Shown piece after piece: positions 824 through 60,771 of a DNA stretch of 64,000 bases. The DNA is from Octopus bimaculoides. Lineage: Eukaryota. The notes beneath the pieces are model-generated. The model searched no databases, was not told the DNA's origin, and was given only the letters and a program-made list of their open reading frames with translations. Numbering within the stretch: position 1 is the stretch's first letter; the number at the start of each line of letters is the position of its first letter. The DNA lies in contig NC_068982.1 of assembly GCF_001194135.2 (NCBI RefSeq), positions 169,180,163-169,244,162 of the forward strand. Direction: 5' to 3'. The position numbers and the translations under genes were made by a program.

Positions 824-60771
<59,948 letters not shown>

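What the first reader, a model, noticed from the sequence alone, without database searches (positions are those of the whole stretch)
38649..38678. Candidate micro first exon MATVFQ that would start ferlin directly at C2B
Seen: in the 22.5-kb intron between the linker exon (ends QDFQ) and the C2B exon (starts IRVKV), the minus strand reads acceptor aattacag, ATG in A-3/G+4 context, codons MATVFQ, then a perfect CAG|GTAAGT phase-0 donor. Splicing to 18933 gives [16 protein letters not shown], restoring the FQ residues that open the first C2B strand. Established: vertebrate otoferlin has short isoforms lacking C2A and dysferlin has alternative first exons. Inference: an internal promoter makes a C2A-less ferlin. 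Caveat: by a rough hand estimate an FQ|GT motif alone is expected about once or twice by chance in this intron; the weight comes from the donor, Kozak context and acceptor coinciding.
Basis: partly seen in the sequence, partly recalled or inferred. Interest (0 to 1): 0.7.

Follow-up and report, generated by a model that had tools for sequence, protein, structure and literature searches.

The report
Probable chance start-plus-donor motif in ferlin intron
The ATG, six codons and perfect splice donor are really there inside a 22.5-kb intron of a dysferlin-like gene. Nothing I could test shows the block is used as an exon, so it is most likely a chance cryptic splice signal rather than the start of a shorter protein.

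Summary
The sequence is as described. On the minus strand, 38678..38649 reads ttcatcatcata-ATG GCT ACA GTT TTT CAG, followed by GTAAGT. The ATG has A at -3 and G at +4. The donor is in phase 0 with the C2B exon that starts at 18933.

CAGGTAAGT occurs only once in the window, counting both strands. The full pattern is expected about 0.001-0.009 times per shuffled intron.

The biological reading has no support:
- **Acceptor:** the cited AG is no better than a random AG (rank 492 of 1334), and a first exon needs no acceptor.
- **Promoter:** none is visible. GC is 27-30% and CpG observed/expected is about 0-0.18. TATATAA is common in this intron, and an in-frame uATG lies 33 nt upstream.
- **Orthologues:** three more distant ferlin loci have this intron at only 0.24-0.83 kb, with no such exon.
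- **Closest relative:** its intron could be read for only 5.2 kb, and nothing similar is there.
- **Transcripts:** no transcript-derived protein was reachable.

The same bases also resemble a recursive splice site: TTTTTCAG|GTAAGT with a second GTAAGT 37 nt downstream. Its 3' splice-site half is mediocre, however, and equally good AG|GT sites occur on the antisense strand.

My weighting is about 0.6 chance cryptic signal, 0.12 C2A-less isoform and 0.12 recursive site. Junction reads, 5'-end data or a close-species alignment would decide.

The parts
38649..38678 (-). The 30-nt block of the finding: ttcatcatcata + ATG GCT ACA GTT TTT CAG ([10 protein letters not shown]; MATVFQ from the ATG at 38666-38664).
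   Evidence: The block is unique within the window and not part of a repeat family.
38643..38651 (-). CAG|GTAAGT, a perfect 9-nt 5' splice-site consensus, with the junction between 38649 and 38648. The five T's and C before the AG also make it a juxtaposed acceptor-like/donor motif (tttttcag|GTAAGT).
   Evidence: It is the only CAGGTAAGT in the window on either strand. As a donor it ranks 2 of 1325 GTs in the intron and beats all six real donors of the gene seen here. As an acceptor it ranks only 144 of 1334 AGs.
38606..38611 (-). A second GTAAGT (aacagg|GTAAGTaa), 37 nt downstream of the first. It bounds a possible 37-nt out-of-frame recursive-splicing exon at 38648..38612.
   Evidence: donor rank 6. 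AG|GTAAGT with a GTRAGT 20-100 nt downstream is expected 0.017 times per shuffled intron.
38679..38680 (-).
   Evidence: There is no polypyrimidine tract (tggaatttagttaattacag). Score -6.1, rank 492 of 1334 AGs in the intron.
38685..38699 (-). An upstream in-frame mini-ORF, ATG GAA TTT AGT TAA, starting 33 nt before the candidate ATG.
   Evidence: Six further uATGs lie within 213 nt upstream.
38735..38741 (-). TATATAA, the only TATA-like element upstream of the candidate.
   Evidence: Read. There are 16 TATATAA in the sense strand of this intron, 0.71 per kb. I saw no suitably spaced initiator when reading the sequence.
18934..41467 (-). The host intron, 22,534 nt, phase 0, between the linker exon and the first C2B exon.
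   Evidence: It is full of repeats and microsatellites. The orthologous intron is 236, 834 and 816 nt in L002, L003 and L004.
41468..41673 (-). Linker exon (...[64 protein letters not shown]) with a weak donor, CAG|GTTATT.
   Evidence: The weak donor is shared by orthologues (GTGATT, GTTGGT, GTTTGA). The 5' boundary and phase are not fully resolved (see Noticed in passing).
18739..18933 (-). First C2B exon, [10 protein letters not shown]...DELIEFQ (65 codons).
   Evidence: It is 89% identical in amino acids to L001. Pfam C2 match E=2e-23.
16255..16305 (-). Second C2B exon, [17 protein letters not shown].
12527..12673 (-). Third exon, covering the end of C2B and the start of FerI: [14 protein letters not shown]...GPGDESP.
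   Evidence: Pfam FerI match.
60680..60771 (-). C2A exon, [30 protein letters not shown](K).
47654..47753 (-). C2A exon, (K)[33 protein letters not shown].
   Evidence: L002 has the counterpart.
29084..29099 (-). The only other Y5-N-AG|GTRAGT site in the window (caattcttcag|GTGAGT, junction at 29090|29089). It lies inside a repeat family.
   Evidence: Copies of the element are at 20920-21251, 58916-59206, 4711-4787, 23903-23955 and 43929-43983.

Best explanation
The block is a fortuitous cluster of signals in repeat-expanded, AT-rich intronic DNA of a dysferlin/myoferlin-like ferlin gene. The signals are an ATG in good context, a short open frame, a consensus-perfect 5' splice site and a second strong 5' splice site 37 nt downstream. 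It is not a regular exon.

The inferred mechanism is as follows. U1 snRNP can pair perfectly with CAG|GTAAGT. No usable acceptor lies within 360 nt upstream, and no promoter defines a 5' end, so the site is not paired into an exon. The whole 22.5-kb intron is then removed from the linker exon's own donor at 41468|41467 to the acceptor at 18934|18933. The FQ ending follows from TTT-CAG. In T-rich DNA that is the commonest way to precede a consensus CAG|GT donor, and it is the same reason that acceptor tracts translate as F-Q.
For: - **No acceptor.** The cited acceptor is random-grade, and the best acceptors within 400 nt upstream score only about 2.1-2.5 and lie 365-377 nt away.
- **No promoter.** There is no CpG or GC signal of a promoter. 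TATA-like strings are abundant, and uATGs precede the ATG.
- **Similar candidates.** Six other in-phase ATG-ORF-GTRAGT candidates sit in the same intron, and 3-9 occur on control strands.
- **Antisense control.** Juxtaposed AG|GT sites of equal or higher combined score occur on the antisense strand at 16538, 49832 and 42645.
- **Acceptor tracts read as F-Q.** The real C2B acceptor tract itself translates as ...FFFQ. ORF-style gene calls on other species' contigs read MFFLFQ-VRVKILEARQ or LSFQ-IRVKV straight through the acceptor.
- **Orthologues.** The orthologous intron is under 1 kb, without such an exon, in three other invertebrate loci.
- **Closest relative.** Nothing similar lies in the 5.2 kb of the closest relative's intron that could be read.
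- **Proteins.** No protein with this N-terminus was found.
Against: - The compound motif is rare by chance in this particular intron: 0.001-0.009 expected, and Y5-CAGGTAAGT 0.005.
- The donor is the only perfect 9-mer in 128 kb of sequence, counting both strands.
- It sits in a 1.4-kb island free of within-window repeats.
- Phase and residues match the conserved DFQ|IRV junction.
- No expression data were available, so non-use is inferred, not shown.
Confidence: 0.6

Rival explanations
1. An internal, probably tissue-specific, promoter just upstream of 38678 starts a transcript whose first exon ends at 38649. Splicing to 18933 gives MATVFQ-IRVKV..., a type-I ferlin that lacks C2A and the acidic/basic linker and begins at strand 1 of C2B.
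For: - The donor is perfect and in phase 0 with the C2B exon.
- The ATG has A at -3 and G at +4.
- F-Q is a conserved residue pair predicted to lie in strand 1.
- The compound motif is about 1e-3 by shuffling.
- The block is unique, non-repeat sequence within the window.
- Ferlin genes are known to use alternative promoters (OTOF, PMC7768390; DYSF_v1, PMC8650162).
Against: - No promoter signature is present, and the region is CpG-depleted.
- A TATA-placed start would include the in-frame uORF MEFS* and further uATGs.
- The acceptor argument is void.
- The exon cannot be ancestral, because the intron is under 1 kb elsewhere.
- No protein with this N-terminus was found.
- To my knowledge no ferlin isoform starts exactly at C2B. 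OTOF short forms drop C2A through C2C (PMC7768390).
- The second GTAAGT and the T5C tract are left as extra coincidences.
Confidence: 0.12
2. This is a recursive splice site (ratchet point). The linker exon is first spliced to the AG at 38650-38649, removing 2.8 kb. That regenerates a strong CAG|GTAAGT donor in place of the exon's own weak CAG|GTTATT. The regenerated donor then removes the remaining 19.7 kb. The 37 nt down to the second GTAAGT act as the cryptic, out-of-frame recursive-splicing exon that lets the site be recognised. MATVFQ is then meaningless.
For: - The anatomy matches the published description: juxtaposed acceptor and donor, a strong regenerated donor, and a short cryptic exon of about 50 nt bounded by a downstream donor and usually out of frame (PMC8605326). 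Here it is tttttcag|GTAAGT, then 37 nt, then GTAAGT.
- Y5-CAGGTAAGT is expected 0.005 times per intron. AG|GTAAGT with a second donor 20-100 nt downstream is expected 0.017 times.
- It lies in the longest intron mapped in the window. That intron's own donor is weak here and in orthologues where the intron is short.
Against: - Fly recursive sites have very strong 3' splice-site halves, stronger than ordinary acceptors (PMC6110457). This one ranks 144 of 1334 and scores below five of the six real acceptors of the gene.
- Equal or better juxtaposed AG|GT sites occur on the antisense strand.
- The only other Y5NAG|GTRAGT site, at 29089, is repeat-derived.
- The split is very asymmetric, 2.8 kb against 19.7 kb.
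- In flies, recursive splicing is confined to the longest introns, commonly over 40 kb (PMC6110457).
- I know of no report of recursive splicing in molluscs.
- Conservation could not be tested.
Confidence: 0.12
3. The strong U1 site is used without making a stable mRNA. It acts either as a decoy or telescripting site that suppresses premature cleavage and polyadenylation in this very AT-rich stretch, or as the donor of a rare pseudoexon or poison exon.
For: The site is perfectly complementary to U1 and sits in a region of 27-30% GC. Pseudoexons from strong cryptic sites in long introns are well documented, for example in DMD (PMC7175933, abstract only).
Against: GTRAGT motifs are not enriched on the sense strand of the intron (13 sense, 17 antisense). 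No good acceptor lies upstream for a pseudoexon. The idea cannot be tested by sequence alone.
Confidence: 0.1
4. This is an in-frame 30-nt cassette micro-exon. The acceptor aattacag and the donor at 38649 would insert [10 protein letters not shown] between QDFQ and IRVKV.
For: The block is 30 nt, open and in frame on both sides, and it ends in FQ so that the DFQ-like context before IRV is kept. Human DYSF has an alternative exon 5a (PMC8650162). From my own knowledge, exon 5a lies in the C2A-C2B linker.
Against: The acceptor is no better than a random AG. The insertion is a very hydrophobic decapeptide at the start of strand 1. Orthologues have DFQ directly joined to [IV]RV.
Confidence: 0.03

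Closest known systems
Cryptic 5' splice sites and pseudoexon seeds in long introns (for example DMD pseudoexons, PMC7175933)
   Same: It is a consensus-strength donor deep in a long, repeat-rich intron, with no matching acceptor and no evidence of inclusion.
   Different: Here the donor is preceded by an in-phase ATG in good context. It also ends in the same two residues as the upstream exon, which is what drew attention.
Alternative promoters and first exons of vertebrate ferlins: OTOF short isoforms and DYSF_v1
   Same: The gene family is the same, as is the idea that an internal or alternative start gives N-terminally different proteins (PMC7768390, PMC8650162).
   Different: [quoted passage not shown] From my own knowledge, DYSF_v1 replaces exon 1 but still encodes a C2A. 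Neither starts at C2B. No transcript or promoter evidence exists here.
Recursive splice sites (ratchet points) with cryptic recursive-splicing exons in Drosophila and vertebrates (PMC8605326, PMC6110457, PMC6224609)
   Same: It shares the juxtaposed AG|GTAAGT, the strong regenerated donor, the short out-of-frame stretch ending at a second strong donor, and a long host intron.
   Different: The polypyrimidine/3' splice-site half is weak. The intron is modest in length, and the site lies close to the intron's 5' end. There is no conservation or intermediate evidence, and comparable motifs occur on the antisense strand.
DYSF alternative exon 5a
   Same: It is an alternative exon of a type-I ferlin (PMC8650162). 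From my own knowledge, it lies in the C2A-C2B linker intron.
   Different: Exon 5a is an expressed internal exon. The 30-nt block here has no credible acceptor.

Membership tests
Alternative coding first exon driven by an internal promoter | Promoter or transcription start immediately upstream | tested here: inconclusive
   There is no CpG or GC rise. One TATATAA lies 69-75 nt upstream of the ATG, but there are 16 such strings in the intron. I saw no suitably spaced initiator. 5'-end data are unavailable.
Alternative coding first exon driven by an internal promoter | 5' splice site in phase with the downstream exon | tested here: met
   CAG|GTAAGT is in phase 0, and the C2B exon starts in phase 0.
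Alternative coding first exon driven by an internal promoter | First AUG of the transcript in good context | tested here: inconclusive
   A at -3 and G at +4 are met. An in-frame uATG lies 33 nt upstream and six more within 213 nt, so the feature holds only if the 5' UTR is shorter than 33 nt.
Alternative coding first exon driven by an internal promoter | Transcript evidence (junction 38649>18933) | not testable with these tools
   The protein collection held no same-species or transcript-derived ferlin.
Alternative coding first exon driven by an internal promoter | Conservation in related species | tested here: inconclusive
   The exon is absent from the 236-834-nt orthologous introns of L002-L004 and from the 5.2 kb available in the closest relative, L001. 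The part of L001's contig near its linker exon could not be fetched. The JGI metagenome scan had no power.
Recursive splice site with recursive-splicing exon | [quoted passage not shown] | tested here: met
   The site reads tttttcag|GTAAGT, and the donor ranks 2 of 1325.
Recursive splice site with recursive-splicing exon | Very strong 3' splice site / polypyrimidine tract (PMC6110457) | tested here: not met
   Score -0.45, rank 144 of 1334. This is weaker than five of the six real acceptors of the gene.
Recursive splice site with recursive-splicing exon | Short cryptic exon bounded by a downstream donor, usually out of frame (PMC8605326) | tested here: met
   The stretch is 37 nt and ends at agg|GTAAGT at 38611.
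Recursive splice site with recursive-splicing exon | Splicing intermediates, sawtooth profile and deep conservation of the motif | not testable with these tools
   No RNA data and no alignable relative intron were available.
Ferlin family, type I (dysferlin/myoferlin-like): the host gene | N-terminal C2A, linker, C2B and FerI in that order | tested here: met
   Pfam finds C2 (two stretches) and FerI on the spliced exons. The best solved relatives are dysferlin at 1.5e-43, myoferlin at 2.8e-43 and otoferlin at 1e-38.
Ferlin family, type I (dysferlin/myoferlin-like): the host gene | DysF domain, FerA/FerB, C-terminal C2 domains and TM anchor | not tested
In-frame cassette micro-exon | A functional acceptor upstream of the block | tested here: not met
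   The acceptor aattacag ranks 492 of 1334.

The most novel reading that the evidence does not exclude
The site is a working recursive splice site in a cephalopod-type ferlin gene. The linker exon's weak donor (GTTATT, inherited from an ancestrally short intron) is first spliced to tttttcag at 38649. That regenerates a perfect CAG|GTAAGT donor, which then clears the remaining 19.7 kb, using a 37-nt cryptic exon for recognition. As far as I know, this would be the first recursive splicing described outside insects and vertebrates. It would also link intron expansion to the acquisition of ratchet points.
Probability: 0.12. Interest if true: 0.55.

Novelty: not a real feature. Interest (0 to 1): 0.2.

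Why it matters
From my own knowledge, C2A is the calcium- and lipid-sensing domain that tunes dysferlin's membrane-repair function. The isoform would then be a natural experiment on what C2A is for.

If the recursive-site reading were right, it would extend a rare splicing mechanism to a new phylum. It would also suggest how genes cope when short introns balloon.

As things stand, the main value is cautionary. A perfect donor, a Kozak ATG and matching residues can coincide at about 1e-3 per intron, and the F-Q match is largely a by-product of T-rich sequence before CAG|GT.

Tried and rejected
1. **Junction-peptide search.** I searched the 5.8-billion-protein collection with MATVFQ plus C2B. 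It returned only ORF-style fragments from other species' genomic contigs and bird DYSF partials. None was from the same species, none was transcript-derived, and none had this N-terminus.
2. **Chimeric query.** I used the window's C2A exons, linker and the intronic ORF at 31177-31512 to find the relative's upstream exons. There were no hits.
3. **Walking upstream in the relative's contig.** I tried the neighbouring called gene, which turned out to be called with TGA read through. There were no hits, and all three searches were then spent.
4. **JGI metagenome scans.** Scans for the degenerate micro-exon pattern and for a cephalopod ferlin exon as a control both gave 0 hits. The negative therefore has no power.
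5. **Repeat membership of the block.** I rejected this. The stretch 38000-39400 is single-copy within the window.
6. **A second recursive-like site at 29089.** I rejected it as supporting evidence because it lies in a repeat family with at least five further copies or fragments in the window.
7. **Rfam scan of 36000-41600.** It gave only sub-threshold microRNA-like hits on a (TG)n microsatellite and on a stretch at 39626-39739. Nothing fell at the candidate.
8. **A candidate last C2A strand at about 47494 and a tblastn hit at 43792-43754.** I rejected both. The first is part of a SINE-like repeat, and the second has no splice sites and is flanked by stops.
9. **Pfam on transposon-like ORFs.** It recognised only a PHD finger at 27057-27365.

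Full report
**1. What is there**

On the minus strand the window reads ...agttaattacag|TTCATCATCATA ATG GCT ACA GTT TTT CAG|GTAAGTgtacc....
- The 30 nt at 38678..38649 translate as [10 protein letters not shown].
- The ATG at 38666-38664 has A at -3 and G at +4.
- The exon-like block ends at 38649, and GTAAGT follows.
- A second GTAAGT lies 37 nt further on (aacagg|GTAAGT, G at 38611).

**2. The host gene**

The minus strand carries the 5' part of a ferlin gene. I mapped these exons:

| Exon | Coordinates | Note |
|---|---|---|
| C2A exon | 60771-60680 | |
| C2A exon | 47753-47654 | |
| Linker exon | ends 41468 | ends ...KKQDFQ; donor CAG\|GTTATT |
| C2B exon 1 | 18933-18739 | |
| C2B exon 2 | 16305-16255 | |
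| C2B/FerI exon | 12673-12527 | |

- Pfam finds C2 and FerI on the spliced product.
- The closest solved structures are dysferlin (1.5e-43), myoferlin (2.8e-43) and otoferlin (1e-38).
- The first C2A exon was not found in the window.
- The intron holding the candidate is 41467..18934, which is 22,534 nt in phase 0.

**3. Is FQ meaningful?**

Yes, as a residue pair.
- Human dysferlin and myoferlin read KPQDFQIRV, and otoferlin reads MDYQVSI.
- Three other invertebrate ferlin loci read T/QDFQ|[IV]RVKV, with the intron at the same place and phase.
- An AlphaFold model of this C2B (mean pLDDT 75) places Q-D-F-Q in strand 1.

But F-Q is also what TTT-CAG encodes, and T-rich sequence followed by CAG is what precedes many splice junctions.
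- The real C2B acceptor tract translates as FFFFQ.
- ORF-style gene calls on other species' contigs read MFFLFQ-VRVKILEARQ or LSFQ-IRVKV straight through the acceptor.
- TTYCAGGT occurs four times in the intron.

**4. Chance**

- CAGGTAAGT occurs once in the window on both strands together.
- In 1000 dinucleotide-preserving shuffles of the intron, ATG-ORF-FQ|GTRAGT is expected 0.009 times. With a Kozak context it is expected 0.001 times, and ATG-ORF-CAGGTAAGT 0.02 times.
- The real intron also holds six other in-phase ATG-ORF-GTRAGT candidates. The control strands hold 3-9.

The coincidence is real and rare for this one intron. The pattern was chosen after it was seen, however. At about 1e-3 to 1e-2 per 22 kb, my rough extrapolation is that a genome of long introns still yields many such cases.

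**5. Splice-site quality**

I scored all sites with a simple PWM and polypyrimidine score.
- The candidate donor ranks 2 of 1325 GTs in the intron and beats all six real donors of the gene.
- The second GTAAGT ranks 6.
A first exon needs no acceptor anyway.
- The best acceptors within 400 nt upstream are weak (scores about 2.1-2.5) and lie 365-377 nt away. Exon definition of an internal exon here is therefore unlikely.

**6. Promoter evidence**

- GC is 27-30% and CpG observed/expected is 0-0.18 across 38000-39250. These are among the lowest values in the neighbourhood.
- TATATAA at 38741-38735 is one of 16 in this intron.
- A transcription start placed about 30 nt downstream of it would include an in-frame uORF (ATG 38699, MEFS*). 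Further uATGs lie upstream.
- I saw no properly spaced initiator element.

None of this excludes a CpG-poor, tissue-specific promoter, but nothing supports one.

**7. Comparative evidence**

- The nearest relative I could reach is L001 (ENA ERZ21867824 ctg117856l). It shares 78-81% nucleotide identity in the three C2B exons, and its introns cannot be aligned to the window.
- Only 5.2 kb of its intron upstream of the IRVKV exon was obtainable. That stretch has no AGGTRAGT and nothing similar to the block.
- The candidate lies 2.8 kb from the 5' end of the intron. The informative part of the relative's intron was therefore not covered, and attempts to reach it failed.
- In three more distant loci (L002-L004) the orthologous intron is only 236, 834 and 816 nt, with weak donors (GTGATT, GTTGGT, GTTTGA) and no micro-exon.

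The 22.5-kb intron is thus a lineage-specific expansion. Any exon inside it would be a recent gain. The JGI metagenome scans had no power, because the control exon pattern also found nothing.

**8. A rival that uses the same bases: recursive splicing**

The site reads tttttcag|GTAAGT, followed by 37 nt and a second strong donor. That is the published anatomy of a ratchet point with its cryptic, out-of-frame recursive-splicing exon (PMC8605326).

In favour:
- Y5-CAGGTAAGT is expected 0.005 times per intron. AG|GTAAGT with a donor 20-100 nt downstream is expected 0.017 times.
- It would replace a weak donor (GTTATT) with a perfect one for removal of the remaining 19.7 kb.

Against:
- Fly recursive sites have very strong 3' splice-site halves (PMC6110457). 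This one ranks 144 of 1334.
- The antisense strand carries AG|GT sites of equal or higher combined score, at 16538, 49832 and 42645.
- The only other Y5NAG|GTRAGT site, at 29089, is repeat-derived.
- The split of the intron is very asymmetric.

**9.

- DYSF has a second promoter (DYSF_v1) and alternative exons 5a, 17 and 40a (PMC8650162).
- From my own knowledge, DYSF_v1 still encodes a C2A, and I know of no ferlin isoform that starts at C2B.

**10. Verdict**

The interpretation cannot be decided with the data in reach, and the circumstantial tests lean against it. My weighting:

| Reading | Weight |
|---|---|
| Chance cryptic signal cluster, unused | 0.6 |
| C2A-less isoform from an internal promoter | 0.12 |
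| Recursive splice site | 0.12 |
| U1 decoy or rare pseudoexon | 0.1 |
| 30-nt cassette exon | 0.03 |

Junction reads, 5'-end mapping and alignment with close cephalopod genomes would settle it quickly.

Noticed in passing
window 41467-41462 (-); L002 9759-, L003 9161-, L004 9173-: The donor of the linker exon is weak (CAG|GTTATT, with no purine at +3 and no G at +5). It is weak in three other invertebrate ferlin loci too (GTGATT, GTTGGT, GTTTGA), where the intron is under 1 kb. A weak donor retained in front of a 22.5-kb intron is unusual.
   Followed up: partly
window 47649-47654 and 41673-41674 (-): The phases do not add up. The strong donor ACT|GTGAGT at 47654|47653 is phase 0, but the only AG in front of the linker exon (caaacag|GTGGTGTT) needs one base from the previous exon. 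Three explanations are possible: the weak donor GTGA|GTACAT at 47650|47649 is used, a short exon is unmapped, or the assembly has an indel.
   Followed up: partly
window 31177-31512 (-): A 111-codon ORF lies on the gene's strand inside the same intron ([38 protein letters not shown]...). It is basic and serine-rich. It has no homologue in the protein collection, no Pfam family and no counterpart in L001-L004. About one ORF of this length is expected by chance in the window.
   Followed up: partly
window 29084-29099 (-): A second strong juxtaposed site, caattcttcag|GTGAGTGA, is the top-scoring donor in the intron by my PWM. It lies inside a repeat family with further copies or fragments at 20920-21251, 58916-59206, 4711-4787, 23903-23955 and 43929-43983. 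In the copy near 21044 the ORF list suggests ATGAGT instead of GTGAGT, but I did not align the copies.
   Followed up: partly
window 54251-55250 (+ strand ORF 54476-55183): This is the only CpG-rich stretch in the window (GC 0.48-0.50, CpG observed/expected 0.97-1.10). It overlaps a 235-codon ORF on the opposite strand to the ferlin gene, inside the C2A intron. Pfam finds nothing. It may be a young transposon or a nested gene.
   Followed up: partly
window 44990-45397 (-) and 7183-7473 (-): These ORFs have a mariner/Tc1-like transposase C-terminal look (…[14 protein letters not shown]; …[16 protein letters not shown]). That is my own reading, and Pfam did not recognise them. L001:1-143 carries a similar remnant (…SPDLNPLGYFIW).
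   Followed up: partly
window 27057-27365 (-): A 102-codon ORF has a PHD-finger match (Pfam E=4e-7). It sits next to reverse-transcriptase-like ORF fragments at 26645-27056, so it is probably part of a retroelement.
   Followed up: partly
window 15216-15891, 17722-17731, 62827-63144: There are three assembly gaps (N runs of 676, 10 and 318 nt). The two long ones interrupt copies of the same repeat, which has ORFs starting [39 protein letters not shown]... and [37 protein letters not shown]...
   Followed up: no
window 39626-39739 (+/-) and 37387-37620: A stretch at 39626-39739 gives sub-threshold microRNA-family hits on both strands, so it may be a palindromic, MITE-like element. A long (TG)n microsatellite at 37387-37620 also attracts microRNA models. 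Neither reaches an Rfam gathering score.
   Followed up: no
L001 (ENA ERZ21867824 ctg117856l), called genes: Several genes called on this eukaryotic contig contain in-frame TGA codons. They were evidently called with a TGA-reading genetic code, so their products are artefacts. This is why exon-bearing ORFs are only patchily present in the protein collection.
   Followed up: yes
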